The position numbers and the translations under genes were made by a program. The notes beneath the pieces were generated by a model. The model made no database searches. It saw nothing but the letters and a program-made list of their open reading frames with translations, and was not told where the DNA came from. Below are positions 1,211-39,568 of a stretch of 64,000 nt of DNA, in pieces. Positions within the stretch are counted from its first letter, which is position 1. Each line of letters begins with the position of its first letter. Origin of the DNA: Macrostomum lignano (lineage: Eukaryota); NCBI GenBank assembly GCA_002269645.1, contig NIVC01000573.1:248001-312000 (forward strand), given 5' to 3'.

Positions 1211-5303
<4,093 letters not shown>

Positions 5304-14500: not shown

Positions 14501-17500
14501 CCAGTGGAGGGTATTGTAACACAGTGGAGGGGGGTTGTAGCTCAGTGGAGGGTTGTAGCCCAGTGGAGGGGGTTGTAGCCCAGTGGAGGGTATTGTAGCC
14601 CAGTGGAGGGGGGTTGTAGCTCAGTGGAGGGTTGTAGCCCAGTGGAGGGGGGTTGTAGCCCAGTGGAGGGGGGTTGCAGCCCAGTGGAGGGGGCTGTAGC
14701 CCAGTGGAGGGTTGTAGCCCAGTGGAGGGGGTTGCAGCCCAGTGGAGGGGGGTTGTAGCCCAGTGGAGGGTATTGTAACCCAGTGGAGGGGGGTTGTAGC
14801 TCAGTGAAGGGTTGTAGCCCAGTGGAGGGGGTTGTAGCCCAGTGGAGGGTATTTTAGCCCAGTGGAGGGGGGTTGTAGCTCAGTGGAGGGTTGTAGCCCA
14901 GTGGAGGGGGGTTGTAGCTCAGTGGAGGGTTGTAGCCCAGTGGAGGGGGGTTGTAGCCCAGTGGAGGGGGGTTGCAGCCCAGTGGAGGGGGCTGTAGCCC
15001 AGTGGAGGGGGGTTGTAGCTCAGTAGAGGGTTGTAGCCCAGTGGAGGGGGTTGTAGCTCAGTGGAGGGGGGTTGCAGCCCAGTGGAGGGTTGTAGCCCAG
15101 TGGAAGGGGGTTGTAGCCCAGTGGAGGGGGGTTGCAGCCCAGTGGAGGGGGCTTTAGCCCAGTGGAGGGGGGTTGTAGCTCAGTGGAGGGTTGTAGCCCA
15201 GTTGAGGGGGTTGTAGCTCAGTGGAGGGGGTTGTAGCTCAGTGGAGGGGGGTTGCAGCCCAGTGGAGGGTAATTTAGCCCAGTGGTTAAAGCGTTGGACT
15301 TACGACTTGAAAATCGGGGGTTCGATTCCCGATCCCACTCGGAACAATTTGTGTCCTTGACCGAGACGCTTAACTCTGCATTGCTTCAGTTCTCCCAGCT
15401 GTAAAATGGGTGCCAGAATTAACTTGGGTAATTGAGGGTGTGTGTGGGCGACCCGGTTACACATCTGGCCCAAACGGGGCAGGAGTAATCAATCAAGAAA
15501 CCGGCCCTGGCCGTAGCAACTGGGTTTGACTTCACTTTCGTTAGCCAAGAGCTGACGATGCTGTGACATTTCGCAGTGCATTCAATTCCACCTCTTTGCC
15601 GGACAATGACACCGTGGGAAGTCAAACTCACCTGTGAGCTCCATACCGGACAAGGCGGACGCTGCCAGGCTCATGGCTCTTTGCCTGGCAACTGGCGGCC
15701 CGATCGGACTGTCGCCATCCCTGTCTGTTTGAGGCGTCTGCGGCGACAGCGGTAGCGGGTTGGCTGCGGCAGCCGGATGCTGGGAGCTCTGGCCTGCCGC
15801 TGCTGCAGTGTCGTTGAGGTTGGGTCATGGGTTATGCTTAGAGTAGCAAATTAGCTAAGAGTAGCAACGGGGAGCCATAGATTAGCAATAAGGGAAGCCA
15901 TAGATTAGCAACAGGAGCCATAGATTAGCAACGGGGAGCCATAGATTAGCAACGGGGAGCCATAGATTAGCAACGGGGGGAGCCATAGATTAGCAACGGG
16001 GAGCCATAGATTAGCAAGCCACCTCAGATTTAGAACGCAATGAACGCAGCAAAGCAGCCAATTCAAACTGGGATAATTAGGAAAAAATACTGTGGAAGCA
16101 AAGTTAATTACTTCCAATTATTGAAGTTTCGGTCTATGGCATGGTTTGTCTACTTATAATAGCAGAAGAAGAATATTTTATTCCTTTTCTTATCCAGCAT
16201 GTTCAAATTTAACATCGAAATCTGATGGAACTCATTCAAATCTCATTTTCTGTATTAGAAAAACATCTGTAGGATAATTCTCAATAGAAAAGGCAGGAAA
16301 GCTGCTGAATTCATAAAAACTGCTAGCGCATCCATTATCATTGACAATTTTTGAATAAGCCACTCCAGATTACCCCCCCCCCCCTACTCAGACTACTCCC
16401 CTACTCAGAGAGCCGAAACAATGGCAGGCACACGAGGCACGCGGTAGTCTGTTTACGGAATCCAGCAGGGCATTGAATTCTGGGAATCTGCATCGGCGGC
16501 CTTGCCGCTTCAGCGGTCCCGGGAGGAAAAACATTTAAAACAAAAAGCAGAGCAGCTCAACGAAATTTCCCTTCCCCCCTTTTCAATAGAGATAATAAGA
16601 ATCCTCTTCCTCACGGAGCAGAGTCGGGATTTTTTTGGGGGGGGGGAATTGGCGACAGGCTGAGGGCGGAGCCGAGCTGGCAGATTCCTGCTAGAGGATC
16701 TGCATCCTTCTCATGCGGGCTGCCGGAGGCGAGCCGTGGAGCTCTGGAACCATGCTGTCTGGATTGGAAACAGCAGACTGGGCTAAGCACAAGCCGAAGC
16801 TGAAATTTCTACTCCTTGATTAAACTGCACTGAGTAGACTTACAAAATTTGTTATAAATTTAATGGCTTATTCAGAGGACGCCTTCACAAATCGGCAACT
16901 TCACTAGGGCTAGGGCTAGGGCTAGGATTAGGGTTAGGATTAGGGTTAGGGTTAGGATTAGGGTTAGGGTTAGGGTTAGGATTAGGATTAGGGTTAGGGT
17001 TAGGGTTAGGGTTAGGGCTACAGAAAGAGGTGCACCAACGCCCCTGGACTGCCGGCAATGCCGCGAGGCTGTCCCTGTCCTTTACCCGCCCTGCGCAGGG
17101 CCCTGCTTGGACTCAACCGCAAGGACATCAGGGCGTCGACCATGGCCTTCTCGGGTCATGACTGCCTTGCCAGGTATCGTCAGCTCCAGGGAAAATCCGC
17201 AGTGAGGAATGCCCCTTCTGCCTCTCCGGTGTCGAGAATGCGGAGCACCTCATCTGTGAACTCCCCGCCTTTACTCAGGACCGGCTCAGGACAGAACCCG
17301 GACCTCTCCGACGTTTTTAGGCCCGAGAATCTCTGCCAGCTCGTCCGCTACCTAAGGGCTACCGGGCGAGCGACAATCCACCTCCTGGACTCTCGGACAC
17401 CGGCACCACCGGATCTCCCTGCGCGACACCGCAGCACCAGCTGCGCGTGGTCGCCAGGGGTTAGCGAAATGGGCGGAAACGCCTCCTCGCTGCATCCGGA

Positions 17501-20500
17501 TGCACGGAGCCCCCTGCAGCTCTTACCCAACAATAGTCAAAAGCTCCACCCACCAATCAAAGATATTTCTTCACCTCTTACTGTGAATTTCAAATAAGAA
17601 GTTTTTATTTATACAGGTGGAACTTTTGGCTGTTGCTGAGGATAAGTCAAGTAGGGTTAAGACTAGTGCTAGGGCTAGCTAGGGTTAGGGTTAGGGATAG
17701 GACTGGCTAGGGCTAGGGTTGAAGTCTAATTGGCTATTTTCGAGCTGTAGAGTTCAGGAACTACAAATCTGCAATGCTATCTTAGTAGGGTGTCTTCACC
17801 ATGAGGGAAAGACAATGTGTGCTGCATTAAAACTGTCTCTTTTTTTCACAACAATATTACTTCAGTAGGAAAGAGCCCATTGAGATGATAGCTTGCGTGA
17901 TTAATGAAACCTGCCACAAGGGCCGCGGTCAGGTCCGCCTTCCAGACGCTGCGTCCAGAACTCCTTGTCCGAGCCTGTCTACTTGGTCGGGGACTCGGCC
18001 AGCAGGGGGTGGGGGTAGAAAGGGGGGCAAATATTGGCTCTATCTGGGACCTGGAGTCTTCAGCAGGGGTGTTTTATCGCTGTGTGGCGAGCAGAAACTC
18101 GCAGAATCGAGCTGCGGCCTCCTCAACCCCCCTCCCGCCCCCAACACCCGAGATGCCGGAAGACGCCAGGGCAGGAGATGAATGACTAAAAGTTAGCCCG
18201 AGGTAAAGAGGATGAGATGAATAATGGCGCTCGCACTGACTGACTGACTGACCGAGCAGTTTAAGAATTGACTAGCATGAAGGCTGCGGTTGACCTCAGG
18301 AACTGACAGGTCAAGCCCGCTGCTGCTGCCACCTGGCGGCCAGAAATTGAAGCAATACCGATGCACTGTTCGAGCATTTTCTCACCAAAGCGACTTACTA
18401 GTGATTTCTTATTAGAGGCAGGGAGCTGTGTGCACCTGGTGCACTTTAAGCGACAAATTGTCACCCAACCGGCGAGAGGCATTACTGCCCATTCTGCCAA
18501 CATACCCTGAGCAGACATACAGCGGCCCTAACTCGTACACACCACTGTGCTTTGGGGATTGGCCCTCAATGGCGTTAATTACACGAGCAGAGCCAAAGTC
18601 GATATTCCAAGAGCCTCAAATTATTATCTACAGTTTGGTTCTTACTCATGATAAACATAAAAAGGTAATGCCTAAGGGATAATTTAATACTTTAGAGATC
18701 CAATAAATCATCACTGAATCTCACCCTGGAGAATCTCTCATGACTGAATCTCACCCTAGAGAATCTCTCATCAATGAATCTCACCCTAGAGAATCTCTCA
18801 TCAACCAATCTCACCCTGGAGAATCTCTCATCACTGAATCCCACCCTGGAGAATCTCTCATCAATGAATCTCACCCTGGAGAATCTTTCATCAATGAATC
18901 TCACCCTAGAGAATCTCTCATCAATGAATCTCACCTACAGAATCTCTTATCACTGAATCTCACCCTGGAGAATCTCTCATCACTGAATCTCACCCTGGAG
19001 AATCTTTCATCAATGAATCTCACCCTAGAGAATCTCTCATCAATGAATCTCACCTACAGAATCTCTTATCACTGAATCTCACCCTGGAGAATCTCTCATC
19101 AATGAATCTCACCCTGGAGAATCTCTCATCACTGAATCTCACCCTGGAGAATCTTTCATCAATGAATCTCACCCTAGAGAATCTCTCATCAATGAATCTC
19201 ACCTACAGAATCTCTTATCACTGAATCTCACCCTTGAGAATCTCTCATCACTGAATCTCACCCTGGAGAATCTCTCATCAATGAATCCCACCCTGGAGAA
19301 TCTCTCATCACTGAATCTCACCCTGGAGAATCTTTCATCAATGAATCTCACCCTAGAGAATCTCTCATCAATGAATCTCACCTACAGAATCTCTTATCAC
19401 TGAATCTCACCCTTGAGAATCTCTCATCAATGAATCCCACCCTGGAGAATCTCTCATCACTGAATCTCACCCTGGAGAATCTTTCATCAATGAATCTCAC
19501 CCTAGAGAATCTCTCATCAATGAATCTCACCTACAGAATCTCTTATCACTGAATCTCACCCTTGAGAATCTCTCATCACTGAATCCCACCCTGGAGAATC
19601 TCTCATCAATGAATCTCACCCTGAAGAATCTCTCATCACTGAATCTCACCCTGGAGAATCTCTCATCACTGAATTTCACCCTGGAGAATCTTTCATCAAT
19701 GAATCTCACCCTGGAGAATCTTTCATCAATGAATCTCACCTACAGAATCTCTTATCACTGAATCTCACCCTTGAGAATCTCTCATCACTGAATCCCACCC
19801 TGGAGAATCTCTCATCAATGAATCTCACCCTGGAGAATCTCTCATCACTGAATCTCACCCTGGAGAATCTCTCATCACTGAATCTCACCCTGGAGAATCT
19901 TTCATCAATGAATCCCACCCTAGAGAATCTCTCATCAATGAATCTCACCTACAGAATCTCTTATCACTGAATCTCACCCTTGAGAATCTCTCATCACTGA
20001 ATCTCACCCTGGAGAATCTCTCATCAATGAATCCCACCCTGGAGAATCTCTCATCAATGAATCTCACCCTGGAGAATCTATCATCACTGAATCTCACCCT
20101 ACAGAATCTCTCATCAACCAATCTCACCCTGGAGAATCTCTCATCAATTAATCTCACCCTACAGAATCTATCATCACTGAATCTCACCCTAGAGAATCTT
20201 TCATCACTGAATCTCACCCTGGAGAATATTTCATCATTGAATCTCACCCTACAGAATATATTTTCACTGAATCTCACCCTAGAGAATATTTTATCACTGA
20301 ATCTCACCCTGGTAAATCTCGCGCCAGAGATTATGATTTATTAGAAAAATCACGGTTAGAACGGAATGAAAACCGCTTTAATCTCTCATAAAATTGGTAA
20401 AAGGGCACCCTACCTCAGCCGGGCGGGATGAGGCAGAGAGGCTGGGCGTGACTGCTCTGCAAATTAATTTGACTAAGAGCAGCGTGGGCCCCCCACCCCA

Positions 20501-23473: not shown

Positions 23474-25103
23474 TATCTGGGACACGCGGGCGGAAGGTCC
23501 CCCCCGAGCCCTCAGCCAGATGAAAACGAATTTTTTGCCTTGCTAACCAAAAAATTGCAATCCCACAGCCGGCATGCTGGCCACAGTTCATTAGCGACTC
23601 GGCCGGGAGCATTGTGGGCGGCAACTGCACGCCTTCGCTCCTTATCTCTTTCCGCTCACTTCCCCCTGGCCTGCCAAAATGCAATCAAAATTATCAGCTC
23701 TCATAAATTCACTATTACATCTTTTTTGATGGACAGCTACTCCCATCATTTATAGTCGTCATGCATTCGTGACGGCTTTCAGGAAGTTCTCGGGCAAACT
23801 TTCATGCTTATAATAAACAACGCCCAATGATCCAGTTCAGCATAGTTATTTTTTATTTAAACTAATTTTAATTAACAAACGTAATTTTGTACATTGAAAT
23901 TAGCTAACCTAAATAATATATGAAAAAATACGACGTATTTTACAAACGCTTAATACAGATGAGATAAAGTATTTCACATTTCACATTATAACTGATCGAA
24001 CATAAAGTACACGTACTCGAAAAAGTAGCTATAAACTTAATGAGGACAATGAATCGTATAATAGTTAAAATTAAAATAAACAACAATTATTATTTAGTTA
24101 TGTATTTATGTGCCGCGCTGGTGCATTTTGCTTTATTCATTTTTATTTTATTCATAGTTTCGTGAATAATATTTTGTGTTTTTAGTTAAGACGAAGATGT
24201 CGAATGAAATGGTTGAATGTTAATGTGTTTATTATTATATTGATGCATGCATAAAAAAACGAAAAAAACAGGAACATAATTTAGGTTTAATAAATTACTT
24301 GTTTTTTGTTTTTTGTTTTAAAGATAGTCTGCAATCTTGAAAAGTTAATATCCTGTTTCTTAGAAATTAACCAAATTGTTTCATTTTTGCCGGGAAAAAA
24401 TAGTAAAACCAAGTAGTGATTCTATATAAAAAATTCAAACATGATTTGATAAAATTGACCATTCGAGCGTCAGTTTTCCTGTAAAAATTTGATAAGAAAA
24501 ACACTGTGAAAGCGAAGCAAAAAAGTACAGAGTGCAATTTTATTCGGAAAATAATGGACAAAGCGATACTTAAGAAAGTACTTTTCAATGGTAATTAATT
24601 CATCAGCAATGTCTGCATGTCCACTCGGACCGTAGCTAAAAATGGTAATCGCAGGTGCAACACTCAAAAGCTCTCTTTCGCGTACGCATTTGCTGCAAAC
24701 ACCTGCACACCTATATGTGCCAAATCGTTCAATCTTGCAGAGAGCTAATTAGCAATTTTCAAGCCCCTGCTTCGTGCGACCCCCAGCGCATGTTGCTGAT
24801 TAGTCTAGAAATTTCTTCGTGCTTTCGAAGGGCAACTCCGCTGTCCATATTTTTGTTACATCACGGCATTTGAACGGATAGTCGCCAAGGTGTTTTTTTT
24901 AATTTTTATGGAATATGCAACTTGAATTTTTGGAGCATCTAACAATTTAAGATACGAGTAATTTAAAATAAAACATCCAATTTAACGGTAGTAAAAGCTT
25001 GACAAAAGGTATGACAAATATTTCTGTTGGTTTGAAACCTGCTCCCGAAAAGGGTAAAGTTTACCATATGATACTGGTCCCTAAGCCAACGAAAATATTT
25101 AAC

Positions 25104-28100
25104 TTAACGACCCCCGCGGCGCCTGAAGCCCCGACCACCGCGTCTGAAGCCGCGACTCCTGGCACGCCTGAAGCCCCGACCACGGCGCCTGAAGCCACGA
25201 CCACCGCGCCTGAATCTCATTCTATGCCGCCGATAGAAGCGTCTGCGATGATGATTCCGTGAATGACCATGGCGGAATCTGCGAGAACGGCGTCGGTTCA
25301 GGACATAGTAGCGACGGTGGTTGTGTGGCCGTTTAGTCCACGAACTGGTTGTAGCTGGCTCCTCCGAGGGACTGGGTACTGCTGAGGTAACTGATACTGT
25401 GCTGGGAGTTGGAGTGGTGGTAACCTCTGGCTCGTTCGTGTCAGAAGCTTGAGTAGTCTCAGGCTTGATGGTGTCAGGAGCCGGAGTGGTTACAGGCTCT
25501 ATAGTGCCACTGGATGAAGTTGACGCAGGCTGATTGGTGTCAGGAGCTAGAGTACTCTCCGGCTTGACAGTATCAGGAGCCGGAGAGGTTGCAGGCTCAA
25601 CGGTCTCAGGTGCTGGAGTGGTTGCAGGCTCGACGGTCTCAGGATTCGGAGAGGTTGCAGTCTCGACGGTCTCAGGAGCTGGAGTGGTTGCAGGCTCGAC
25701 CGTGTCGGGAACTGGAGTGGTTGCAGGCTCAACGGTCTCAGGTGCTGGAGTGGTTGCAGGCTCGACGGTCTCAGGATCCGGAGAGGTTGCAGGCTCGACG
25801 GTATCAGGAGCTGGAGTGGTTGCAGGCTTGACGGTATCAGGAGCTGGAGTGGTTGCAGGCTCGACGGTCTCAGGAGATGGAGTGGTTGCAGGCTCGACGG
25901 TATCAGGAGCTGAAGTGGTTGCAGGCTCGACCGTGTCAGTAGATGGAGTGGTTGCAGGCTCAACGGTCTCAGGATCCGGAGAGGTTGTAGGCTCGACGGT
26001 CTCAGGATCCGGAGAGGTTGCAGTCTCGACGGTCTCAGGAGCTTGAGTGGTTGCAGGCTCGACCGTGTCAGGAACTGGAGTGGTTGCAGGCTCAACGGTC
26101 TCAGGTGCTGGAGTGGTTGCAGGCTCGATGGTCTCAGGATCCGGAGTAGTTGCAGGCTTGACGGTATCAGGAGCTGGAGTGGTTGCAGGCTTGACGGTAT
26201 CAGGAGCTGGAGTGGTTGCAGGCTCGACGGTCTCAGGAGATGGAGTGGTTGCAGGCTCGACGGTATCAGGAGCTGGAGTGGTTGCAGGCTCGACCGTGTC
26301 AGTAGATGGAGTGGTTGCAGGCTTAACGATTTCAGGATCCGCAGTGGTTGCAGTCTCGATGGTCTCAGGAGCTTGAGTGGTTGCAGGCTCGACGGTCTCA
26401 AGTGCTGGAGTGGTTGCAGGCTCAACGGTTTCAGGTGCTGGAGTGGTTGCAGGCTGGACGGTCTCAGGAGATGGAGTGGTTGCAGGCTCGACCGTGTCCG
26501 GATCCGGAGTGGTTGCAGGCTTGACGGTATCAGGAGCTGGAGTGGTTGCAGGCTCGACGGTATCAGGAGATGGAGTGGTTGCAGGCTTGACGGTCTCAGG
26601 AGCTGGAGTGGTTGCAGGCTTGACGGTATCAGGAGCTGGAGTGGTTGCAGGCTCGACGGTCTCAGGAGATGGAGTGGTTGCAGGCTTGACGGTCTCAGGA
26701 GCTGGAGTGGTTGCAGGCTCGACCGTGTCAGTAGATGGAGTGGTTGCAGGCTCAACGGTTTCAGGATCCGCAGTGGTTGCAGTCTCGACGGTCTCAGGAG
26801 CTTGAGTGGTTGCAGGCTCGACCGTGTCAGGAACTGGAGTGGTTGCAGGCTCAACGGTCTCAGGTGCTGGAGTGGTTGCAGGCTCGACGGTCTCAGGATC
26901 CGGAGAGGTTGCAGGCTCGACGGTATCAGGAGCTGGAGTGGTTGCAGGCTTGACGGTATCAGGAGCTAGAGTGGTTGCAGGCTCGACGGTCTCAGGAGAT
27001 GGAGTGGTTGCAGGCTCGACGGTATCAGGAGCTGGAGTGGTTGCAGGCTCGACCATGTCAGTAGATGGAGTGGTTGCAGGCTCAACGGTCTCAGGATCCG
27101 GAGAGGTTGCAGGCTCGACGGTCTCAGGATCCGGAGAGGTTGCAGTCTCGACGGTCTCAGGAGCTTGAGTGGTTGCAGGCTCGACCGTGTCAGGAACTGG
27201 AGTGGTTGCAGGCTCAACGGTCTCAGGTGCTGGAGTGGTTGCAGGCTCGATGGTCTCAGGATCCGGAGTAGTTGCAGGCTTGACGGTATCAGGAGCTGGA
27301 GTGGTTGCAGGCTTGACGGTATCAGGAGCTGGAGTGGTTGCAGGCTCGACCGTGTCAGTAGATGGAGTGGTTGCAGGCTCAACGGTTTCAGGATCCGCAG
27401 TGGTTGCAGGCTCGACGGTCTCAAGTGCTGGAGTGGTTGCAGGCTCGACGGTCTCAGGAGATGGAGTGGTTGCAGGCTCGACCGTGTCAGGAGCTGAAGT
27501 GGTTGCAGGCTCGACGGTCTCAGGATCCGGAGAGGTTGCAGGCTCGACGGTCTCAGAAGCCGGAGTGGTTGCAGGCTCCAGGGTCTCAGGATCTGGAGAT
27601 GTTGCAGTCTCGACGGTCTCAGGAGCTGGAGTGGTTGCAGGCTCAACCGTGTCAGGAGCTGGAGTGGTTGCAGGCTCGACCGTGTCAGGAGATGGAGTGG
27701 TTGCAGGCTTGACGGTATCAGGAGCTGGAGTGGTTGCAGGCTCGACCGTGTCAGGAGCTGGAGTGGTTGCAGGCTCAACGGTCTCAGGATCCGCAGTGGT
27801 TGCAGTCTCGACGGTCTCAGGATCCGAAGTGGTTGCAGGCTTGACGGTATCAGGTGCTGGAGTGGTTGCAGGCTCGACGGTCTCAGGTGCTGGAGTTGCT
27901 GCAGTCTCTGGCTTGATGGTCGCTGCAGCTGGAGTAGTTTGTACGGTTACAGTTGTTACCTCTGGCTCGACTGTATTAAGAGCTTCAAAGGTGCTTGATT
28001 CCGGCTGGCTTGTAGTAGGAGTAGTGCTCAAGTCGGTAGTAGTCTCAGTTGTCACTGGCTTAGCGGTGCTCAATCCGGAAGTGGCTTCAGGGGTCGCTGA

Positions 28101-28400
28101 AGCAGTCACAGTGGCCGGTTGCTCCGTGATGAAGCCGCAGTTGATGATGACCCCGGCCTTCAACCCTTCAACGTACGCTATCTTGCCAGCCTCGCTGGCG
28201 CAGGTGTTGGAGCTCGGGAACGAGGCGCAGAAGTCAATCAGTCTCTGCTGGCTGTAGACGCCAATGCAGGACTCGCACAGTTTGATTCGCGGCTTGTTGA
28301 AGCACTCGTCCAGGGTGACGGACTCGGCTGGTGGCAGCAGCCTGCTGTCGGCCATGACGGAGGCCGCCAGCAGCAGCAGGTTCAGCCAGTTCGGTCGCAT
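25104..28400 (-). CDS. Intronless secreted mucin-like protein (1098 aa): signal peptide, small 6-Cys domain, about 74 x 11-aa PATTPAPETVE repeats, and a 76-aa Arg-rich C-terminal tail
   Basis: Uninterrupted ORF from ATG (28400) to TAA (25104). N-terminus MRPNWLNLLLLAASVMA is hydrophobic and signal-like. The 33-bp unit stays in frame and varies mostly at synonymous or conservative positions. Unique sequence lies on both sides of the repeat in the same frame. Confidence 0.88.
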   Translation of the reverse strand: MRPNWLNLLLLAASVMADSRLLPPAESVTLDECFNKPRIKLCESCIGVYSQQRLIDFCASFPSSNTCASEAGKIAYVEGLKAGVIINCGFITEQPATVTASATPEATSGLSTAKPVTTETTTDLSTTPTTSQPESSTFEALNTVEPEVTTVTVQTTPAAATIKPETAATPAPETVEPATTPAPDTVKPATTSDPETVETATTADPETVEPATTPAPDTVEPATTPAPDTVKPATTPSPDTVEPATTPAPDTVEPATTPAPETVETATSPDPETLEPATTPASETVEPATSPDPETVEPATTSAPDTVEPATTPSPETVEPATTPALETVEPATTADPETVEPATTPSTDTVEPATTPAPDTVKPATTPAPDTVKPATTPDPETIEPATTPAPETVEPATTPVPDTVEPATTQAPETVETATSPDPETVEPATSPDPETVEPATTPSTDMVEPATTPAPDTVEPATTPSPETVEPATTLAPDTVKPATTPAPDTVEPATSPDPETVEPATTPAPETVEPATTPVPDTVEPATTQAPETVETATTADPETVEPATTPSTDTVEPATTPAPETVKPATTPSPETVEPATTPAPDTVKPATTPAPETVKPATTPSPDTVEPATTPAPDTVKPATTPDPDTVEPATTPSPETVQPATTPAPETVEPATTPALETVEPATTQAPETIETATTADPEIVKPATTPSTDTVEPATTPAPDTVEPATTPSPETVEPATTPAPDTVKPATTPAPDTVKPATTPDPETIEPATTPAPETVEPATTPVPDTVEPATTQAPETVETATSPDPETVEPTTSPDPETVEPATTPSTDTVEPATTSAPDTVEPATTPSPETVEPATTPAPDTVKPATTPAPDTVEPATSPDPETVEPATTPAPETVEPATTPVPDTVEPATTPAPETVETATSPNPETVEPATTPAPETVEPATSPAPDTVKPESTLAPDTNQPASTSSSGTIEPVTTPAPDTIKPETTQASDTNEPEVTTTPTPSTVSVTSAVPSPSEEPATTSSWTKRPHNHRRYYVLNRRRSRRFRHGHSRNHHRRRFYRRHRMRFRRGGRGFRRRGRGFRRARSRGFRRGGRGFRRRGGR

Positions 28401-28814
28401 CTCTCACCACCGTCACACCTCAATGCAAACCAAATTTGAATTTATTGGACGTCAGAAGCACGTTGATAGAGCTTGAGAAACTAATTTTCAGCCTGTTTTA
28501 ATATTTTCCATTGATTGCGTAACTCAAAACTCAGGTGTTGCAAGTAAAAAGTAATTCTCTTGAGCTAGCAATAGCTTTATGTAACTATATGAAATTCCGT
28601 GCCTATTATACAGCTTTAATCACGGTGCAACCTCGTGCGAGAAAAAGAGTTCAAGGACATCTGAAGTTTGTAGTCATCACTTGTAAGTACTAGAAATACT
28701 ATTACTATTATTTTTATTTTTATTATTAATAGTACTTTTAATATTCAATAACTGCGCAAGCCGAAGAGATGATTTCATAATTACTAATTACATCGAAAGA
28801 ATTACAAAATAGAA

Positions 28815-28816
<2 letters not shown>

Positions 28817-28878
<62 letters not shown>
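28817..28878. repeat. (CAA)n microsatellite
   Basis: Direct reading. Confidence 0.95.
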
Positions 28879-28879
<1 letters not shown>

Positions 28880-28924
28880 TAAAATCCCCCCACCATAAAA
28901 TCCACGGTGACGCCCCTGGTCCTT

Positions 28925-29140
28925 TTTTGTATTGTAGATAGGACTCACCAATCCGACTGACCACTGTCTGGGTGTGTATCCAAGCCTCAGGATTGCATTG
29001 AACAGCTTCAGTAGGACTGATTTTTTTGCCGTGAGCAATGTGTTCATTGAAGCTATTCCCGCTTGCTCTTTTCTTCTTCTGGCTGGATGGGAGCTGAACA
29101 CTTACTCAGATTGTTCTTCTTTATTTCTGATATTTGGGCA
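28925..29140 (-). mobile_element. Short non-LTR retrotransposon RT fragment (start of RT domain), truncated
   Basis: VLLKLFNAILRLGYTPRQWSVGLVSPIY matches the LINE consensus L..LFN.I...G..P..W....I.PI.K. Confidence 0.6.
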
Positions 29141-30067: not shown

Positions 30068-30265
30068 TGTAACACTTAGTCACTATTTGAGCAATACGTA
30101 CATACAACTTAGTTTTGTTATAACGATGCACGTTTTTCCAGAACTTTCCCGAAACCCCAATTTCATCTATAAATACACGAAACCAGGAATGCAATTATTT
30201 TAAGTCCTTTTCAATCACTCGATTGACTCAAATAAACAGAGCATTCAACTGCTAAAGTCTTTACA
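30068..30265 (+). mobile_element. Probable 5' LTR (about 198 bp) of the Ty3/gypsy element
   Basis: TGTAA...TTACA termini, TATAAATA near 30168, AATAAA near 30233. Immediately followed by a PBS-like TGGTCCGGTGAGG at 30268 and the gag ATG at 30310. No 3' LTR is available to confirm the boundaries. Confidence 0.6.
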
Positions 30266-30309
30266 ACTGGTCCGGTGAGGCGGATCAACGCAAATACATC
30301 GCGACAACA

Positions 30310-32210
30310 ATGTCAACTCCTAGTGACTCCAGTGCGTCGAACCTACCGCCTCCTCCACCGACGGAGCAACCTCCGTTACCGGTCGTCAGCCAGCCCAGCG
30401 GCGTTGCTTCACCACCGGCGATAAGCCCGCCTAGCACCACCGCCGCGGCACCGTCGATTAGCCAGCCCAGCGTCCTTTTCTCGCCGGCTGCGATGCCGCC
30501 TTACCAGCAGGCTGTGGCTGCCGTCAGCGTCAAAGCCCCGCCGTTCTATCGCAACAACCCAGACGCTTGGTTCCAGACGCTGGAATCTCAGTTTAAGTTA
30601 GCCCGCATCACATCCGAGGAAACAAAGTACCATCACCTCGTGTCCAACCTGCCAGAAGACGTCGCATCTGTTCTCCTGTCGTCTGAGACTCCTGCCAACT
30701 ACACTCTACTGAAGACCAGCGTCTGCAACATGATGCAGAAGAGTAAGCAGGAGAAGATTAACGAACTTCTGGCGACATCGGACCTCGGCGGCGACAAGCC
30801 CTCGATTTTTCTACAACGCCTCACAGCCAAGATGTCGCAATGCGGGATACAACCAGCCAGCTGCCCGGACATGGTCAAAGCCACGCTGTTGCGCTGCCTA
30901 CCGAGCGAATTCCGCCTGGCCTTGTCTGGATTCCAGGAACAGACTCCAGCACAGCTCGCCTCCATCGCCGACTCGATGTTCACCGTCCAGAATTCATTCG
31001 GTCGGGTCAACGCAGCGCAACCAGAGCTCATCGCGGCTGTACCAGCAAAACCAACCGGTGACTTCAACAAGGCTCGGAAAACTAGAAGCAAAGCAGGCCG
31101 TTCAAAGCAGGTCAACGCCCCGTCATCTGCCGCGCTCATATCTTCTACGGCCAACAAGCGCGTACCTGCCGCCACTGGTGCCAGTTTCCAAAGGCACCCA
31201 GTCACTTCCCGCGCGTCCTTACGAACAACGAGGCGACGCCAGCGCAATCGCGATCATCGTCACCAACGCGAAACAGCCCAACTCCGGGAAACTGGACGAC
31301 ACTGCCCAACACGCCGCAGTGAGCAGCGTCAGCCGAGGAAATGCGGCGACGAAGCACTTCCTGGTGGTGGACCTCACATTCAACGGTCAATGTCTGTCCT
31401 TCCTCGTCGACACAGGAGCGGAGCCGCTGTGTCCATCATTCCGCCAAAGTATCTCCACCAGGCTCTTCAGGCTACCGGTTACAGATTGACTACCGCCACC
31501 GGCACGTCCATTCCGGTTTCTGGAGAGATCACTCTCACCGTCTCCATCCGAGGACTTCGTCGATCCTTTCAGTGGACCTTCCTCGTCGCCGCCGTCATCC
31601 AGCCGATCCTTGGTTATGACTTACTATCCCGGTACGGTCTTTTAGTTGACTGCAAGGCACGACAACTGGTGGATCCAGAAACTACGCTGCACACGCAGAC
31701 TCTACCTGTCACCAGCCTGCAGCTTGACAGCTTCGCCGTCTCCCTGGCATATCCCGAGCATTGCGATCCGAGAGTGCAACAGCTCATCGATCGTTTTGCC
31801 GACACCTTCTCGTACGTCGAAGGTGGTCGCCTGCCTAGAGCTGAGGAGGTTAAACACAACACGAAGCACCACATCATCACCAACGAGCATCCTCCGACAC
31901 ATGCCAAAGCGCGACAGCTACATCCCGAGAAGCTTGCCATAGCCAAGGACGAGTTCCAGCAGCTGATCGACGCAGGATACCTTCGGCCTTCCGCCAGCAA
32001 CTGGGCATCAGCTCTTCATATGGTTCCCAAGAAGGACAACGGTGTACCTAACGGAAAATGGCGACCCTGCGGTGATTACCGGCAGCTCAACAAGTTGACC
32101 AAACCGGACAACTATCCTATTCCGCACATCCAGTGCTTCACAAGGAGTCTTCACGGTGCAAGGATCTTCTCGAAGCTGGACCTCGTACGAGCGTACCACC
32201 AGATTCCGAC
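30310..32210 (+). mobile_element. Ty3/gypsy LTR retrotransposon of the CsRn1 lineage: gag, protease and N-terminal RT, truncated at about 32210
   Basis: Gag [28 protein letters not shown]...[10 protein letters not shown]. Gag CHCC motif [18 protein letters not shown] (C-x2-H-x9-C-x3-C) in an alternate frame near 31125-31185. Protease [49 protein letters not shown]. Compensating frameshifts; no YxDD, RNase H or integrase. Confidence 0.92.
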
Positions 32211-32330
32211 ATAGACAATCGGGCGTTAAATGTCATTAACTGCCCGCTAATTTGCATGAAAGTAAGTTTGACATAGACAATCGGGCGTTAAATGTCATTA
32301 ACTGCCCGCTAATTTGCATTAAAGTAAGTT
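32209..32330. repeat. 62-bp direct tandem duplication at the gypsy truncation point
   Basis: ACATAGACAATCGGGCGTTAAATGTCATTAACTGCCCGCTAATTTGCAT(G/T)AAAGTAAGTTT occurs twice. Confidence 0.85.
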
Positions 32331-33067: not shown

Positions 33068-33853
33068 TTAGAAGGAAAAGAACGGGCCCAGAGGCACCCT
33101 GGCGAAGTCCATGCGCTGCTTCGGCCCTTTCATCGTGAATCGCCGTCTACCAACTTTTGTAACCATGGCCGTAGATTTCTCGTTGTCATAGCGACCGGGC
33201 CCGGGGTTCGGCGGGATGGCCGGCCACAGCCGCGTCTCGCCGCGGCACCCGATGCGGCAGCAGCGCTGGCAGTTGTCGCAGACCCCGGCCGGGGTCGCCT
33301 CGTAGGCTCCTGGCGGCGGGCAGGCCAGCTGGCGCCGCAGCTCCGGGTCGTAGGAGGCGCGCGAGTTGAACTGGAAGCCGCTCGCCCTCGGCCGGGTCGG
33401 ATCGGGCTGGCCGAGAGAGCGCAGCCGGTAGGTGGCCGGCTCCGGCCACTGCTCTTCGCGGTAGAGGCCGTCAACCTTCTGGCGCCAGGGGTCGCAGGTG
33501 CAGAACCAGCTCTTCTCCAGAGACTGCTTGGCTCCGGCAATTTCTGATTGGGATTCAGCATTAGATAGTGAGATTATTGTCTGCTTTGCTTCTAACTGAA
33601 CTCTAACTGAACTGCTCACTTCTCTCAGCCCAGGTGCGCCGGCCCATGGACCAGGCGGGCGAAAAGCCAACGGGCCCGGCCAGATTGTAGGACCCGGGGC
33701 CCGGGTTGCCGCAGTCCCGGTATCGAATCTTGCTGAGGGCCTGTTCGACTGGCAGATCGAGACTGGAGCTAAAAATGTTCATTAGGATCAGAGACGTCTG
33801 AATGTGGGTCATGTGTGTTTGGGGCTCTATTGGCCTCAGTCTGTCTGCGTTAG

Positions 33854-35943: not shown

Positions 35944-37428
35944 ATGTCTTCTGAAGCTGCCAGCGAGAGCCAGCCGCTGATCGGAGAGCCGTCCGTGCCA
36001 GAAGCAGCAGCCCCAGCTCCCATGAGCTTCCGGTTGAAGCAGACGGCATTTCTGCTGCTACTAATTAAGCTATGCAGCAACACCTACGAGTACCAGATGA
36101 TGGCCTACAGCGCTGAGCTGCAGGCGAACTCCAGCGAGACTGGGAACTGCAGGTACAGCAGGCAGCCGCAGAACTGCTTGTCCAGCCTGGCCTGCAAAGC
36201 CTCGGCTGCTGCGGCCTACGCGATGCCAACCCTGGGCGGCGTTCTGTGCGACGTCCTGCTCGACTGCCTGCCCACTCTCTGGCTGGGCACGGGGGTCCAC
36301 GCGGCCGGCTCCGTCCTGCTTACCGCCATGGACCGTTTGAATATCCTCTGCCACCTGCCCATCTACCTGCTTACCTGGTCGGCCGTGCTGCTCCATCTCA
36401 GCATCAACGATGCCACGATAATTCACGCTCTGCTGCGGCTGTCCAACCACAGCAGGAACCGGCAGGTGCTTGTCTGTCTGTACTTTGCCGCGGCAGCCGC
36501 TGGGGAGACATTGGGCACCGTGCCCTCACTGCTCCGTCAAGAGCAGAGTGACAGTTTTGAAATTATTTGCTTGGTCTTCGGGATGGCGCACCTGGTCTGC
36601 ATGTCGCAGCTGGCCATCTCAGCGCCGCGGACTGCAAGAATTCGCTTTGAGATGCCTCGACTAAGACAGCTGCGCAGGTTCTACCTGATCACGGCCGGCA
36701 CGGTTCTCCCACTGGCCTGCTTGGTGCTGAGCAGGCTGTCGCTCTACTGGCACCAGATCCAATACTTCACCCGTGCTAGCGGAGACCAGGCGATCCTGGC
36801 CTACTACGTGCCCTTCTCCGGGTACCAGACGGCCATGATTTTGTTCAGCCTGGTTGGCGCAGCCGCTGCGGGGAGGTCCGCCGTCCCTGCCTGGTTCGAT
36901 CGCATCATTCGCATCCGCGCTGGTCTCGGGCTGGCCGCGGCCAACAAGCTGCCGCTGATGCTGCTGAGCCTGCTGGACCATCACGGCGTCATCAGCATGG
37001 CGAGCTGGACGCCTCTGTCAATCTGGTCCGCCTACTTTGCGGTGTCATTCGTGGACGGTGCGGCCAACGCGCTCGCCATTCTGACCATCTACGAGGTTGC
37101 GTACAGCATCGCCAACAAGAGCGCCAAGGCTACGATGGTGGGCGTTTTCTACACATTGTGGGGTCTCGCCGTGCTGCTCGGCTCATCCGTGCTCAGCTTT
37201 TTACAATCTGTTGGAGCCGTGGTCCTGGACGATGCAGACGGCAGTCACGGACAGAAGCCGATGGTTCACAATGCCTATGCAGTGATGATAGCTCTGCAGC
37301 TGATTGCCATTGTCTACTGGGAGAAAATTTCCTGGCCGCTTGCTTCGGTAATGCTGCCTTCGGATGCCGAGCTTGACGAGCAGTTCCGCGAGATTCACGA
37401 GGAGTCGCTGACCAGTGCCGATGAATGA
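35944..37428 (+). CDS. Single-exon MFS transporter, divergent POT/SLC15 family (494 aa)
   Basis: Multiple hydrophobic helices. PTLGGVLCDVLL resembles the POT P.LGG..AD..LG motif. IYEVAYSIANKSAKATMVGVFY resembles the SLC15 GLEFAYS.AP.SM....G.F motif. The protein begins MSSEAASESQPLI. Confidence 0.7.
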   Translation: MSSEAASESQPLIGEPSVPEAAAPAPMSFRLKQTAFLLLLIKLCSNTYEYQMMAYSAELQANSSETGNCRYSRQPQNCLSSLACKASAAAAYAMPTLGGVLCDVLLDCLPTLWLGTGVHAAGSVLLTAMDRLNILCHLPIYLLTWSAVLLHLSINDATIIHALLRLSNHSRNRQVLVCLYFAAAAAGETLGTVPSLLRQEQSDSFEIICLVFGMAHLVCMSQLAISAPRTARIRFEMPRLRQLRRFYLITAGTVLPLACLVLSRLSLYWHQIQYFTRASGDQAILAYYVPFSGYQTAMILFSLVGAAAAGRSAVPAWFDRIIRIRAGLGLAAANKLPLMLLSLLDHHGVISMASWTPLSIWSAYFAVSFVDGAANALAILTIYEVAYSIANKSAKATMVGVFYTLWGLAVLLGSSVLSFLQSVGAVVLDDADGSHGQKPMVHNAYAVMIALQLIAIVYWEKISWPLASVMLPSDAELDEQFREIHEESLTSADE

Positions 37429-38830: not shown

Positions 38831-39568
38831 TCAGTCAAAAGGCGACACGCACTCGCACAGAACTCTCGAAATGCCAAGATTTTCTGGAATGTCGCTAAGA
38901 GCTGACAGGTGGCGGTATCTTGCGATGGCATTTTCAGCGCCTCCATGATTGTTCGGCTCCGTGCTGCCAAAGACACTCGGGCTGACGCTGATGTTGCAGC
39001 CGACCCAGAAGAATCTGCCAGCTGGCTCAGGACTGCCGGGCTGCTGGTAGCCTCCGAGCCAGAACGACTTCCTAGAGCTGTGGTGGACAAAGATAGTCTC
39101 GACATGGCTCATCTCCTCAGCGCTGGTCACGTCGGCCATGATGACCAGACCGCTGTCTGACTCGCACTTCTGTCTGCTCGGCCACCAAGCCCCGATGCCA
39201 GAGTACAGCCTGTACTTCACTCCGCACAGGTCCATGCCGTAGCCAGACGGACACAGCGCGCCCGTCTCAAGTCCCTGTTGGGATTTCATAAACACCCGGC
39301 CTCTCCTGGAGCAGCTGCAGTTCTTCACCGACTTGCTGCACTTGTCGAACACGAACAGCTGGCACGGAACCTCAGTCACCCTGAACGCTTGGCAGCTAGG
39401 GGCGCGGCTGCACAGAGCAGCGCAGCCAATCTTGCTATCCTCTTTGGAGTACGTCTGGACAAACTCGCTGTTGATGCACAGGCTAACATCGGTGAGGCTG
39501 TACAGCAGCAGGCTGGCACTGCTGAAGGCGCAGCGCAAAGTCAGTATCGCGACTATAAGGAGCTGCAT
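38831..39568 (-). CDS. Secreted PAN/apple + C-type lectin domain protein, single exon (start at ATG 39568 or 39598)
   Basis: Signal-like MQLLIVAILTLRCAFSSA. PAN-like CAALCSRAPSCQAF...CQL. CTLD with W..SRQKC, FWLGG, FFW, EPNN, EN and terminal LCE. Confidence 0.8.
   Translation of the reverse strand: MQLLIVAILTLRCAFSSASLLLYSLTDVSLCINSEFVQTYSKEDSKIGCAALCSRAPSCQAFRVTEVPCQLFVFDKCSKSVKNCSCSRRGRVFMKSQQGLETGALCPSGYGMDLCGVKYRLYSGIGAWWPSRQKCESDSGLVIMADVTSAEEMSHVETIFVHHSSRKSFWLGGYQQPGSPEPAGRFFWVGCNISVSPSVFGSTEPNNHGGAENAIARYRHLSALSDIPENLGISRVLCECVSPFD

What the first reader, a model, noticed from the sequence alone, without database searches (positions are those of the whole stretch)
25104..28400. Secreted polyampholyte: unrecognised 6-Cys head, acidic mucin rod and protamine-like Arg/Phe/Gly tail
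Seen: signal-like N-terminus, then an about 60-aa domain with six Cys (C-x8-C-x2-C-x12-C-x8-C-x20-C) that I do not recognise. About 74 Thr/Pro-rich 11-mers follow, each carrying acidic residues. The last 76 aa contain 35 Arg, no acidic residues and repeated GRGFRR motifs, after a dibasic KR site (WTKRPH). Established: Thr/Pro repeats are O-glycosylated; Arg/aromatic/Gly tracts promote coacervation, surface adhesion and antimicrobial activity; flatworm adhesive proteins combine a glycosylated repeat protein with Lys/Arg-rich repeats. Inference: a candidate adhesive, mucus, eggshell or seminal-fluid protein that self-assembles by charge, or a precursor that releases a cationic peptide.
Basis: partly seen in the sequence, partly recalled or inferred. 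Interest (0 to 1): 0.7.

Follow-up and report, generated by a model that had tools for sequence, protein, structure and literature searches.

The report
Orphan flatworm mucin with arginine tail
This is most likely a real, species-restricted flatworm gene for a secreted mucin-like protein with a long acidic sugar-bearing rod and a short, strongly positive arginine tail; the design is unusual, but nothing yet shows that the gene is expressed or what it does.

Summary
A 1098-aa ORF on the minus strand (25104-28400) encodes four parts:
- a signal-like N-terminus;
- a 78-aa head with six Cys, spaced exactly as reported;
- 75 in-register 11-aa PATTPAP(E/D)TV(E/K) units, each acidic;
- a 76-aa tail with 35 Arg and no Asp/Glu.

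It looks like a real single-exon gene. An in-frame stop lies two codons before the ATG. GC content steps up and down exactly at the ATG and the stop. The head fits local codon usage only in this frame. The 33-bp array has no indels, and its units vary least at codon position 2.

A neighbouring gene's only relative is a Macrostomum lignano protein (45% identity), so the host is a macrostomid-type flatworm.

Head and tail have no detectable relatives in Pfam, PDB, 5.8 billion clustered proteins, 1.84 billion representatives or metagenome contigs. The head's structure prediction is of low confidence.

Best reading: an orphan, non-gel-forming secreted mucin built as a charge-block polymer, whose Arg/Phe tail sticks to anionic surfaces or to neighbouring rods.

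Rivals: a precursor that releases cationic peptides; a minisatellite-derived ORF that is not expressed.

It belongs to none of the known flatworm adhesive families. Tissue and function are untested. Interest is moderate to low.

The parts
28404..28406 (-). In-frame TGA stop two codons upstream of the start codon. The reading frame cannot extend further 5' in this exon.
   Evidence: translation ...V*RW*EMRPNW...
28350..28400 (-). Start codon (28398-28400) and predicted signal peptide, aa 1-17: MRPNWLNLLLLAASVMA, with cleavage expected before DS.
   Evidence: the most hydrophobic 11-aa windows in the protein (Kyte-Doolittle 2.0-2.2, starting at aa 5-8), Arg in the n-region, V-x-A at -3/-1. SignalP was not available, so this is inferred.
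28116..28349 (-). Head, aa 18-95, with six Cys (33, 42, 45, 58, 67, 88). Probably a small helical module with three disulfides. No detectable relatives.
   Evidence: Cys positions. Codon-usage log-likelihood +0.52 bits/codon in this frame, against -0.62 and -0.39 in the other sense frames. GC3 0.68, as in neighbouring genes. No family or relative. AlphaFold2 pLDDT 53-54, four short helices. Foldseek found nothing.
27906..28115 (-). Non-repetitive Thr/Ser/Pro-rich linker, aa 96-165 (29 Ser/Thr, 8 acidic residues).
   Evidence: It is the source of the spurious sub-threshold MGC-24 and New_glue Pfam hits.
25441..27908 (-). 33-bp tandem array: 74.8 copies, 75 in-register 11-aa units with consensus PATTPAPETVE. 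This is the acidic mucin-type rod. A large internal duplication shows as a 34-unit (1122-bp) periodicity.
   Evidence: 0% indels. (register); entropy at codon positions 1/2/3 is 0.40/0.20/0.51; 60 synonymous changes and 0 stops in this frame, against 45/2 and 10/13 in the shifted frames; identity peaks at 0.906 at a lag of 34 units..
25335..25440 (-). Degenerate Ser/Thr/Pro-rich end of the rod (about aa 987-1022), ending ...EEPATTSSWT just before the KR site.
25107..25334 (-). Polycationic tail, aa 1023-1098: 35 Arg, 12 Gly, 7 His, 7 Phe, 3 Tyr, no Asp/Glu. Charge +36, pI at least 12. It opens with the dibasic KR and holds 11 runs of two or more basic residues.
   Evidence: Arg and Phe codon choice is roughly that of local genes (CGC is the commonest Arg codon, 7 of 7 Phe are TTC), but Gly codons deviate. 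Whole-codon usage does not favour this frame. No Pfam or PDB match.
25119..25214 (-). 21-bp tandem repeat (4.4 copies, 75% matches) that encodes the RRGGRGF / RRRGRGF heptads of the tail.
25104..25106 (-). TAA stop codon. GC falls from 0.70 to 0.37 immediately 3' of it.
24898..24903 (-). ATTAAA about 200 nt downstream of the stop, a possible polyadenylation signal. This is a consensus match only.
   Evidence: read from the sequence; not tested

Best explanation
This is a single-exon, lineage-restricted gene of a macrostomid-type flatworm. It encodes a secreted, non-gel-forming mucin-type glycoprotein built as a charge-block polymer.

After the signal peptide is removed, the mature chain has three blocks:
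- a 78-aa head with three probable disulfides, probably helical;
- a rod of about 930 aa made of Thr/Pro/Glu/Asp (75 x PATTPAP[E/D]TV[E/K]). Dense O-glycosylation would keep it extended and hydrated, at roughly 0.2 micrometre contour length and net charge -144;
- a 76-aa Arg/Gly/Phe/His tail with charge +36.

Proposed mechanism (inferred). The tail is the sticky block. It binds anionic glycans, surfaces or the acidic rods of neighbouring molecules through charge and Arg-aromatic contacts. The rod is a hydrated anionic spacer or brush. The head is a terminal binding or capping module. The result is either an end-anchored lubricating or protective coat, or a reversibly cross-linked, salt-sensitive gland secretion (mucus or another gland product).

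Shown: the ORF, its composition and its coding-like properties. Inferred: secretion, glycosylation, survival of the tail after secretion, and the mechanism.
For: Real gene:
- A stop lies 2 codons upstream of the ATG.
- The GC step sits exactly at both ORF ends.
- The head matches local codon usage only in this frame and has GC3 of 0.68, as in neighbouring genes.
- The stop-free flanks are improbable by chance, at 0.3% and 4.2% of shuffles.
- The array has 0% indels. Its units vary least at codon position 2, and this frame has the most synonymous changes and no stops.

Secreted and soluble:
- The only strongly hydrophobic segment is the N-terminus, with V-x-A before the predicted cut.
- There is no membrane-helix-like or GPI-like segment.
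- The even number of Cys is confined to the head.

Mucin rod:
- 302 Ser/Thr and 205 Pro in 927 aa; all 75 units are acidic.

Sticky tail:
- +36 charge with 7 Phe and 3 Tyr.

Precedent in the same group of animals:
- Macrostomum gland cells secrete intact Lys/Arg-rich low-complexity regions, detected in footprints. These act by charge on glycans, and polyanions such as heparin block them (PMC6410801).
- Other flatworms have Gly/Arg/Lys/His/Ser-rich ap3 proteins (PMC9229212, PMC8621496).

Host is a flatworm:
- The neighbouring 494-aa ORF has a single relative, M. lignano BOX15_Mlig026305g3, at 45% identity over 96% of its length.
Against: - There is no transcript, protein or orthologue evidence. 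The exact protein is not on record, no homologue was found anywhere, and the M. lignano locus of the neighbouring gene has no counterpart.
- The window is 27% minisatellite and the repeat is open in other frames.
- Codon usage does not support the rod or the tail in this frame. The rod uses locally rare codons (CCT, GCA).
- The charges are unbalanced, at -144 against +36. Self-neutralising assembly is therefore impossible without partner cations.
- The tail opens with KR and holds 11 basic clusters and 2 R-x-[KR]-R sites. Convertases could cut it off or shred it.
- The head model is of low confidence.
Confidence: 0.5

Rival explanations
1. Proprotein. The acidic mucin acts as a long anionic pro-region that neutralises the C-terminal polycation. 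The polycation is cut off at WTKR|PH, and perhaps further at its RR/RRR clusters, and released as one or several cationic peptides that are antimicrobial or otherwise bioactive.
For: - A dibasic KR sits exactly at the rod/tail border, followed by 11 basic clusters.
- Complete dibasic cleavage and trimming would give repeated GGRGF, GRGF and ARSRGF pieces.
- A two-part layout with an anionic part before a cationic C-terminal part is the rule for Hydra antimicrobial peptide precursors, which are also confined to one genus (PMC10945409).
- The tail's 46% Arg with Phe, Tyr and His is typical of membrane-active peptides (general knowledge).
Against: - A 930-aa glycosylated pro-region is far larger than any known antimicrobial peptide pro-piece and outweighs the tail's charge four to one.
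- There is no paralogue cluster in the window, unlike typical antimicrobial peptide families (PMC10945409).
- Flatworm glands are known to secrete intact Lys/Arg-rich regions full of dibasic sites (PMC6410801).
- The GRGF pieces have no Gly after Phe, so they cannot become amidated RFamide-type peptides.
- No similarity to any known peptide family.
Confidence: 0.2
2. Not a functional gene as read. It could be a minisatellite that happens to be open next to a short ORF, a young or decaying lineage-specific ORF, or a gene whose real transcript is spliced or ends so that the Arg tail is not translated.
For: - 30 tandem arrays cover 27% of the window, and many have periods that are multiples of 3.
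- The 33-bp array is open in at least four frames.
- The rod and the tail get no support from codon usage.
- The tail is itself a 21-bp mini-repeat.
- No homologue, no recorded gene call and no synteny.
- Retroelement fragments lie only about 400 bp upstream.
Against: - The head has a clear frame-specific codon signal and a gene-like GC3.
- ATG, signal-peptide-like start, an even number of Cys, the rod and the tail form one uninterrupted frame of 1098 codons. Both of its ends coincide with sharp GC steps and with an upstream in-frame stop.
- The flanks are stop-free against odds of 0.3% and 4.2%.
- There are no indels in about 75 units at 84% identity, and codon position 2 is the least variable.
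Confidence: 0.17
3. A specific component of the duo-gland temporary adhesion system. It would be either a small cohesive or adhesive partner that bridges glycans and Gly/Arg/Lys-rich proteins, or the polyanionic releasing factor that displaces the cationic cohesive protein.
For: - The Macrostomum adhesion model rests on charge. A cationic Lys/Arg-rich ap1 binds glycans, polyanions block attachment, and an unidentified negatively charged releasing substance is postulated.
- Releasing vesicles are PAS-positive and protein-poor (PMC6410801, PMC9229212). A glycosylated chain of net charge -109 fits that description.
- The tail's composition (Gly, Arg, His, Ser) resembles the ap3 'GRKHS' regions in miniature (PMC9229212).
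Against: - The authors postulate a small molecule, not a 111-kDa protein (PMC6410801).
- None of the vWD, C8, TIL, EGF, TSP-1 or lectin domains of ap1/ap2 is present.
- The tail has 1 Lys against 35 Arg and is 76 aa long, not thousands.
- No similarity to any M. lignano protein, although that proteome is in the database searched.
- There are no expression data.
- A cationic tail on a releasing factor would work against its own purpose.
Confidence: 0.08

Closest known systems
Small secreted non-gel-forming mucins and mucin-domain lubricants (e.g. human MUC7, lubricin/PRG4; Drosophila Sgs glue mucins). General knowledge, not tested by alignment.
   Same: - Signal peptide.
- A long Pro/Thr/Ser tandem-repeat domain expected to be O-glycosylated and extended.
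- Small non-mucin end modules that do the binding. MUC7 has a cationic His-rich antimicrobial end, PRG4 anchors to surfaces by its ends, and Sgs proteins have Cys-containing ends.
- No vWD or CK polymerisation domains.
   Different: - No sequence or domain relationship. Pfam finds nothing above threshold (New_glue E=0.19, MGC-24 E=0.023, both lost or sub-threshold).
- Every repeat unit here is acidic.
- The end module is a 46%-Arg, protamine-like tract not seen in those proteins.
Flatworm temporary-adhesion proteins: ap1/ap3 (Gly/Arg/Lys-rich, 'GRK' or 'GRKHS' low-complexity regions) and ap2 (O-glycosylated giant repeat protein) (PMC6410801, PMC8621496, PMC9229212)
   Same: - Same group of animals.
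- Secreted.
- Extreme positive low-complexity sequence rich in Arg and Gly (and His, Ser), used together with a glycosylated repeat protein.
- Charge-based mechanism.
- Also without homologues outside flatworms.
   Different: - There the two chemistries sit on separate giant proteins (about 3,700 to 14,800 aa) that carry vWD, C8, TIL, EGF, TSP-1 and lectin domains.
- Here both are on one 1098-aa chain with none of those domains.
- The tail is only 76 aa with 1 Lys.
- The repeats are 11 aa long, not 221-255 aa.
- No detectable similarity.
Two-part precursors of cationic antimicrobial peptides (anionic pro-region plus cationic C-terminal peptide), e.g. Hydra arminins and periculins (PMC10945409)
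   Same: - Signal peptide.
[quoted passage not shown]
- A basic cleavage site at the boundary.
- Restricted to one taxon and fast-evolving.
   Different: - Those precursors are about 100 aa long and form clustered paralogue families.
- Here the anionic part is a 930-aa mucin rod, and no paralogue lies in the 64-kb window.
Gly/Arg-rich (RGG/GAR) regions of nuclear RNA-binding proteins, and sperm protamines (general knowledge)
   Same: - RGG/RGF-type repeats with interspersed Phe.
- Arg content in the protamine range.
- Expected to bind polyanions and to drive phase separation.
   Different: - Those proteins are nuclear or cytosolic and have no signal peptide.
- This tract sits at the end of a secretory mucin.
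- No hits to any such protein.

Membership tests
Gel-forming mucins (MUC2/MUC5 type) | N-terminal vWD-C8-TIL assemblies and a C-terminal cystine-knot or vWC domain for polymerisation | tested here: not met
   Pfam scan of the whole protein found 0 families. All six Cys lie in the 78-aa head.
Gel-forming mucins (MUC2/MUC5 type) | Central Pro/Thr/Ser tandem-repeat domain | tested here: met
   75 units of 11 aa, with 302 Ser/Thr and 205 Pro in 927 aa. Glycosylation itself was not testable.
CD164/MGC-24 sialomucin (Pfam PF05283) | Match to the family profile above the gathering score, plus a transmembrane anchor | tested here: not met
   15.5 bits against a cut-off of 28.5. The hit vanishes when the Thr-rich linker is removed. 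No membrane-helix-like segment.
Flatworm adhesion protein ap1/ap3 | Very long (thousands of aa) Lys/Arg/Gly-rich low-complexity regions; ap1 also has a lectin-vWD-C8-TIL-EGF core | tested here: not met
   The tail is 76 aa with 35 Arg and 1 Lys. No domains. A head+tail query found no relative at E<=1, although M. lignano proteins are in that database.
Flatworm adhesion protein ap2 | Giant protein with 221-255-aa repeats flanked by TSP-1, TIL and vWD domains; stained by PNA | tested here: not met
   The repeat unit is 11 aa and there are no such domains. Lectin staining is not testable here.
Flatworm adhesion proteins (any) | Expression in tail-plate adhesive glands, presence in footprints, and an RNAi adhesion phenotype | not testable with these tools
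   No expression or proteome data for the source species could be reached.
Anionic-propiece / cationic-peptide antimicrobial precursors | Signal peptide, two-part charge layout, and a basic processing site at the boundary | tested here: met
   Signal-like N-terminus, rod at -144, tail at +36, KR at 1023-1024. This is sequence only; cleavage has not been shown.
Anionic-propiece / cationic-peptide antimicrobial precursors | Short precursor (about 100 aa) in clustered paralogue families, with antimicrobial activity of the released peptide | tested here: not met
   1098 aa, and no paralogue in the window. Activity is not testable here.
RGG/GAR RNA-binding proteins and protamines | Nuclear or cytosolic protein without a signal peptide; RRM, KH or other RNA-binding context, or a small sperm nuclear protein | tested here: not met
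   The tract is the C-terminus of a protein with a signal-like start and a mucin rod. No Pfam or PDB similarity.
Any described Cys-rich domain, for the head | Significant profile, sequence or fold match | tested here: not met
   Pfam: best is CTD5, E=0.11. PDB by sequence: E>1. 5.8 billion clusters: none. 1.84 billion representatives: one hit at E=2.6e-4, to a repetitive junk ORF. Foldseek against PDB: E>5, but on models with pLDDT 53-54, so the fold test is weak.

The most novel reading that the evidence does not exclude
The protein is a working part of the flatworm's reversible glue. One possibility is the long-postulated but unidentified polyanionic releasing or anti-adhesive factor, which would compete with the glycocalyx for the cationic cohesive protein. 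The other is a one-chain 'mini-glue', whose Arg/Phe tail and acidic glycosylated rod reproduce in one molecule the ap1/ap3-ap2 charge pairing. In either case its 6-Cys head would found a new disulfide domain family confined to Macrostomorpha.
Probability: 0.06. Interest if true: 0.75.

Novelty: new variant of a known kind. Interest (0 to 1): 0.35.

Why it matters
If the gene is expressed as read, one chain would combine an acidic O-glycosylated brush about 0.2 micrometre long with a compact Arg/aromatic anchor. Materials scientists build this block-polyampholyte design synthetically for lubrication, antifouling and reversible wet adhesion.

It occurs in the group of animals whose temporary adhesion is already known to run on charge and whose releasing factor is still unidentified. 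It would therefore be a small, tractable candidate to test in that system, at 1.1 kaa against 5-15 kaa for the known glue proteins.

It would also be a clear case of a gene assembled from minisatellites (33-bp and 21-bp arrays) around a short unique exon-like head.

Set against this, lineage-restricted mucin-like ORFs with low-complexity ends are common in invertebrate genomes. Without expression data, this one remains a sequence curiosity.

Tried and rejected
1. Pfam MGC-24 (CD164) and New_glue hits on the N-terminal 148 aa (E 0.023 and 0.19). Both are below threshold and are lost when the Thr-rich linker is removed, so they reflect composition.

2. The single hit in 1.84 billion representatives (P0001, E 2.6e-4). 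It is a 317-aa ORF made of an internal repeat, matched in three stretches of 35 aa. It is not a homologue.

3. Word-indexed searches with the head alone and with a head+tail chimera found nothing at E<=10 and E<=1.

4. Exact-sequence look-ups for this protein and for the neighbouring 494-aa ORF found nothing on record. The source genome's gene calls are therefore not in the collection.

5. Synteny. The M. lignano locus of the neighbour's homologue (L001, 66.9 kb) has no head- or tail-like sequence by tblastn.

6. A metagenome scan with the head found no relative.

7. Two single-sequence AlphaFold2 models (pLDDT 53.1 and 54.4) and Foldseek against PDB gave no match with E<5. The models are too poor for this to mean much.

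8. Idea: the Arg tail arose by inversion of mucin repeat DNA, because its antisense strand translates to APEAPTT-type peptide and short inverted matches exist (I7 and I10). The local DNA alignment score of 22 is reached by 80 of 300 and 114 of 300 shuffles. Rejected as an effect of composition.

9. Idea: the tail is an RFamide-type neuropeptide precursor, because GGRGF and GRGF pieces lie between dibasic sites. This is unlikely. There is no Gly after Phe for amidation, and a mucin rod is foreign to such precursors.

10. No paralogues of the head or tail in the window; the low-complexity tail hits fall on GA-rich repeats.

11. Rfam and tRNA scans of the window found nothing.

12. PDB sequence search with the tail found nothing.

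Full report
**1. What is there**

The minus strand carries one open frame from the ATG at 28400 to the TAA at 25104, 1098 codons long.

- The N-terminus, MRPNWLNLLLLAASVMA|DS, is the only strongly hydrophobic stretch in the protein, and V-x-A precedes the likely cut.
- Cys occur only at 33, 42, 45, 58, 67 and 88, which gives C-x8-C-x2-C-x12-C-x8-C-x20-C.
- A non-repetitive Thr/Ser-rich linker covers aa 96-165.
- It leads into a 33-bp tandem array at 25441-27908 with 74.8 copies, 84% matches and 0% indels.
- In register, the array reads as 75 units of consensus PATTPAPETVE. All 75 have at least one Asp/Glu, 59 have two or more, and 15 end in Lys.
- After a short degenerate Ser/Thr/Pro stretch and WTKR, the last 76 aa contain 35 Arg, 12 Gly, 7 His, 7 Phe, 3 Tyr and no acidic residue. 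RGFRR occurs four times. A 21-bp mini-repeat of 4.4 copies at 25119-25214 encodes this part.
- Computed charges at pH 7 are: head -2, rod (96-1022) -144, tail +36, mature chain -109. The pI is 4.1 overall and at least 12 for the tail.
- There is no N-glycosylation sequon, no membrane-helix-like segment and no hydrophobic C-terminus.

**2. Gene or open minisatellite?**

The question is a fair one. Thirty tandem arrays cover 27% of this window, and the 33-bp array is open in several frames on both strands. Several independent observations favour a real coding gene.

- An in-frame TGA lies two codons upstream of the ATG, so the signal-like Met is the first possible start.
- GC content in 100-bp windows rises from 0.40 to 0.67 at the ATG and falls from 0.70 to 0.37 at the stop. 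It stays between 0.48 and 0.70 throughout the ORF.
- A codon table was built from 2175 codons of recognisable genes in the same window: cadherin, ammonium transporter, PhyH, C2, the lysine-methyltransferase-like exon and the 494-aa membrane protein. Against it the head scores +0.52 bits per codon in the ORF frame and negative values in the other two sense frames. Its GC3 of 0.68 matches those genes, which have 0.54-0.78.
- With composition kept, the non-repeat flanks stay stop-free in 0.3% (head side) and 4.2% (tail side) of shuffles.
- Inside the array, variation among units is lowest at codon position 2 (entropy 0.20, against 0.40 and 0.51). The ORF frame has the most synonymous differences from the consensus and no stops: 60 synonymous and 0 stops, against 45 and 2, and 10 and 13, in the shifted frames. 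These counts are not independent events, because units are copied in blocks. A periodicity of 34 units (1122 bp) is visible.

The weak points are these.
- Codon usage gives the rod and tail no support in this frame.
- The rod uses locally rare CCT and GCA codons, as expected for a recently expanded unit.
- No transcript evidence could be obtained.

I put the probability that this is a functional protein-coding gene, as read, at about 0.8.

**3. Whose genome, and what lies around the gene**

The neighbouring single-exon ORF at 35944-37428 has exactly one relative among 5.8 billion clusters. It is Macrostomum lignano BOX15_Mlig026305g3, at 45% identity over 96% of its length. The host is therefore a flatworm related to M. 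lignano but not identical to it. The rest of the window is ordinary metazoan sequence:
- protocadherin-like exons;
- a C2-domain gene;
- a SHIPPO-repeat ORF;
- a lysine-methyltransferase-like exon;
- PhyH exons;
- two tandem ammonium-transporter copies;
- a Gag/RT retroelement;
- an RT fragment about 400 bp upstream of the ATG.

The window holds no paralogue of the head or the tail. The M. lignano locus of the neighbour's homologue has no counterpart either.

**4. Relatives of the protein**

None were found.
- Pfam gives nothing for the whole protein. The sub-threshold MGC-24 and New_glue hits on the N-terminal 148 aa disappear when the Thr-rich linker is removed.
- The head has no PDB sequence match.
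- It has no match among 5.8 billion clusters.
- It has no relative in metagenome contigs.
- Among 1.84 billion representatives there is one hit, and it is a repetitive junk ORF.
- A head+tail chimera also found nothing, although M. lignano proteins are in that database.
- The tail has no Pfam or PDB match.
- Two single-sequence AlphaFold2 models agree on four short helices but have pLDDT of only 53-54. Foldseek finds nothing, which means little with such models.

As a single sequence it cannot yet be called a domain family. An 81-aa query would also miss an orthologue at about 30% identity. That is plausible here, because secreted and reproduction-related genes evolve fast in this genus (PMC7336406).

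**5. How it most likely works**

Shown: the sequence architecture.

Inferred from established knowledge:
- A cleavable signal peptide sends the chain into the secretory pathway.
- A 927-aa stretch with 302 Ser/Thr and 205 Pro becomes densely O-glycosylated and extended, to about 0.2 micrometre at 0.25 nm per residue.
- Arg-rich tracts with aromatic residues bind polyanions and surfaces.

There is no membrane anchor, so the product is soluble or held by non-covalent contacts.

The best-supported mechanism is a charge-block polymer. The +36 Arg/Phe/His tail is the sticky block. The anionic glycosylated rod is a hydrated spacer or brush. The disulfide-bonded head is a terminal binding or capping module. 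The polymer could then act in one of two ways:
- as an end-anchored coat on anionic surfaces;
- as a reversible, salt-sensitive network in which tails bind the rods of other chains.

A precedent in the same group of animals makes this credible. Macrostomum gland cells secrete intact Lys/Arg-rich low-complexity regions that work by charge on glycans and are blocked by heparin (PMC6410801). Other flatworms have Gly/Arg/Lys/His/Ser-rich ap3 proteins (PMC8621496, PMC9229212).

With -144 against +36, the chain cannot neutralise itself. A neutral coacervate would need partner cations or proteins.

**6. Rivals**

- **Precursor of cationic peptides (0.20).** KR sits exactly at the rod/tail border and is followed by 11 basic clusters. 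The two-part charge layout is that of Hydra antimicrobial peptide precursors (PMC10945409). Against it: the 'pro-region' is a 930-aa mucin, there is no paralogue cluster, and flatworm glands tolerate dibasic-rich secreted proteins.
- **Not a functional gene, or tail not translated (0.17).** The minisatellite-rich context and the lack of any external support favour this. The frame-specific signals in section 2 count against it.
- **A specific part of the duo-gland adhesion system (0.08).** This is attractive because an unidentified negatively charged releasing substance is postulated and releasing vesicles are PAS-positive and protein-poor (PMC6410801). However, the protein has none of the ap1/ap2 domains, no similarity to them and no expression data.

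**7. Comparison with what is known**

In how it works, the protein most resembles small non-polymerising mucins with a functional end module (MUC7, lubricin and Sgs glue proteins, from general knowledge). It also resembles the flatworm pairing of ap1/ap3 with ap2, compressed into one chain.

It is a member of none of them. The defining domains (vWD, C8, TIL, CK, EGF, TSP-1, lectin, transmembrane) were tested and are absent. The CD164 profile is not met. The tail has 1 Lys and 76 aa, against thousands of Lys/Arg residues in ap1/ap3. RGG/GAR proteins and protamines share only composition.

**8. Verdict**

- Observation: confirmed.
- Interpretation: partly supported. The architecture and the flatworm precedent hold, the function is undetermined, and the self-assembly claim needs qualifying.
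- Novelty: a new variant of a known kind, namely a mucin-domain secreted protein with an orphan Cys head and an unusual protamine-like end block.
- Interest: 0.35. The design is neat and testable in a model group. However, orphan mucin-like ORFs with low-complexity ends are common, and nothing yet shows expression, conservation or function.

Noticed in passing
window 1-64000 (e.g. 14068-15285, 18708-20320, 54561-56190): Thirty tandem-repeat arrays with score of at least 100 cover 17.1 kb, 27% of the window. Most have 13-52-bp periods, several have 20-22 bp, and some show strong strand skew. Many create long spurious ORFs in several frames.
   Followed up: partly
window 16905-17017: (TAGGGT) x 18.8 is a TTAGGG-type telomeric hexamer array lying inside the window, that is, an interstitial telomere-like repeat.
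   Followed up: no
window 35944-37428 (+): A 494-aa single-exon multi-pass membrane protein with no Pfam hit. Its only relative among 5.8 billion clusters is M. lignano BOX15_Mlig026305g3 (45% identity; UniRef calls it MFS domain-containing). It appears to be a macrostomid-restricted transporter-like family. The M. lignano gene model spans 47 kb and encloses a duplicated esterase gene, which suggests a mis-joined model across a segmental duplication.
   Followed up: partly
window 57872-59480 and 62931-63476 (+): Two tandem copies of an ammonium transporter gene (Pfam Ammonium_transp, 2.8e-14). Their first exons are nearly identical over about 480 bp, which points to a recent local duplication.
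   Followed up: partly
window 28802-29101 (-) and 30256-32211 (+): A fragment resembling a non-LTR retrotransposon reverse transcriptase (judged from the translation, not scanned against Pfam), followed by (CAA)21, lies only about 400 bp upstream of the mucin ATG. A Gag (DUF7041) plus reverse-transcriptase retroelement lies 2 kb further on. The gene's promoter region is therefore short and flanked by mobile-element debris.
   Followed up: no
window 25104-25262 (+), antisense to the Arg tail: The antisense strand of the tail translates to a mucin-like TTPAAPEAPTTASEAATPGTPEAPTTAPEATTTAPE. Short inverted matches to the gene's own linker exist (25183-25198 against 28081-28096), but the alignment score is not above shuffles. 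This is a compositional mirror of Arg/Gly codons against Pro/Ala/Thr codons, not an inversion.
   Followed up: yes
window 38834-39712 (-): A 293-aa ORF that reads like a secreted Cys-rich protein with a C-type-lectin-like end (WLGGYQ..., FFWV..., EPNN). Pfam reports only a faint PAN_4 hit (E 0.6). It may be a divergent lectin exon.
   Followed up: partly
window 33071-33778 (-), 1211-3222 (+), 8520-12000 (-), 44502-44969 (+), 52209-53160 (+): Other recognisable coding pieces: a sperm-tail PG-rich (SHIPPO) repeat ORF, protocadherin-like exons ending in a membrane-spanning segment, C2-domain (synaptotagmin-like) exons, a lysine-methyltransferase-like exon, and phytanoyl-CoA dioxygenase exons.
   Followed up: partly
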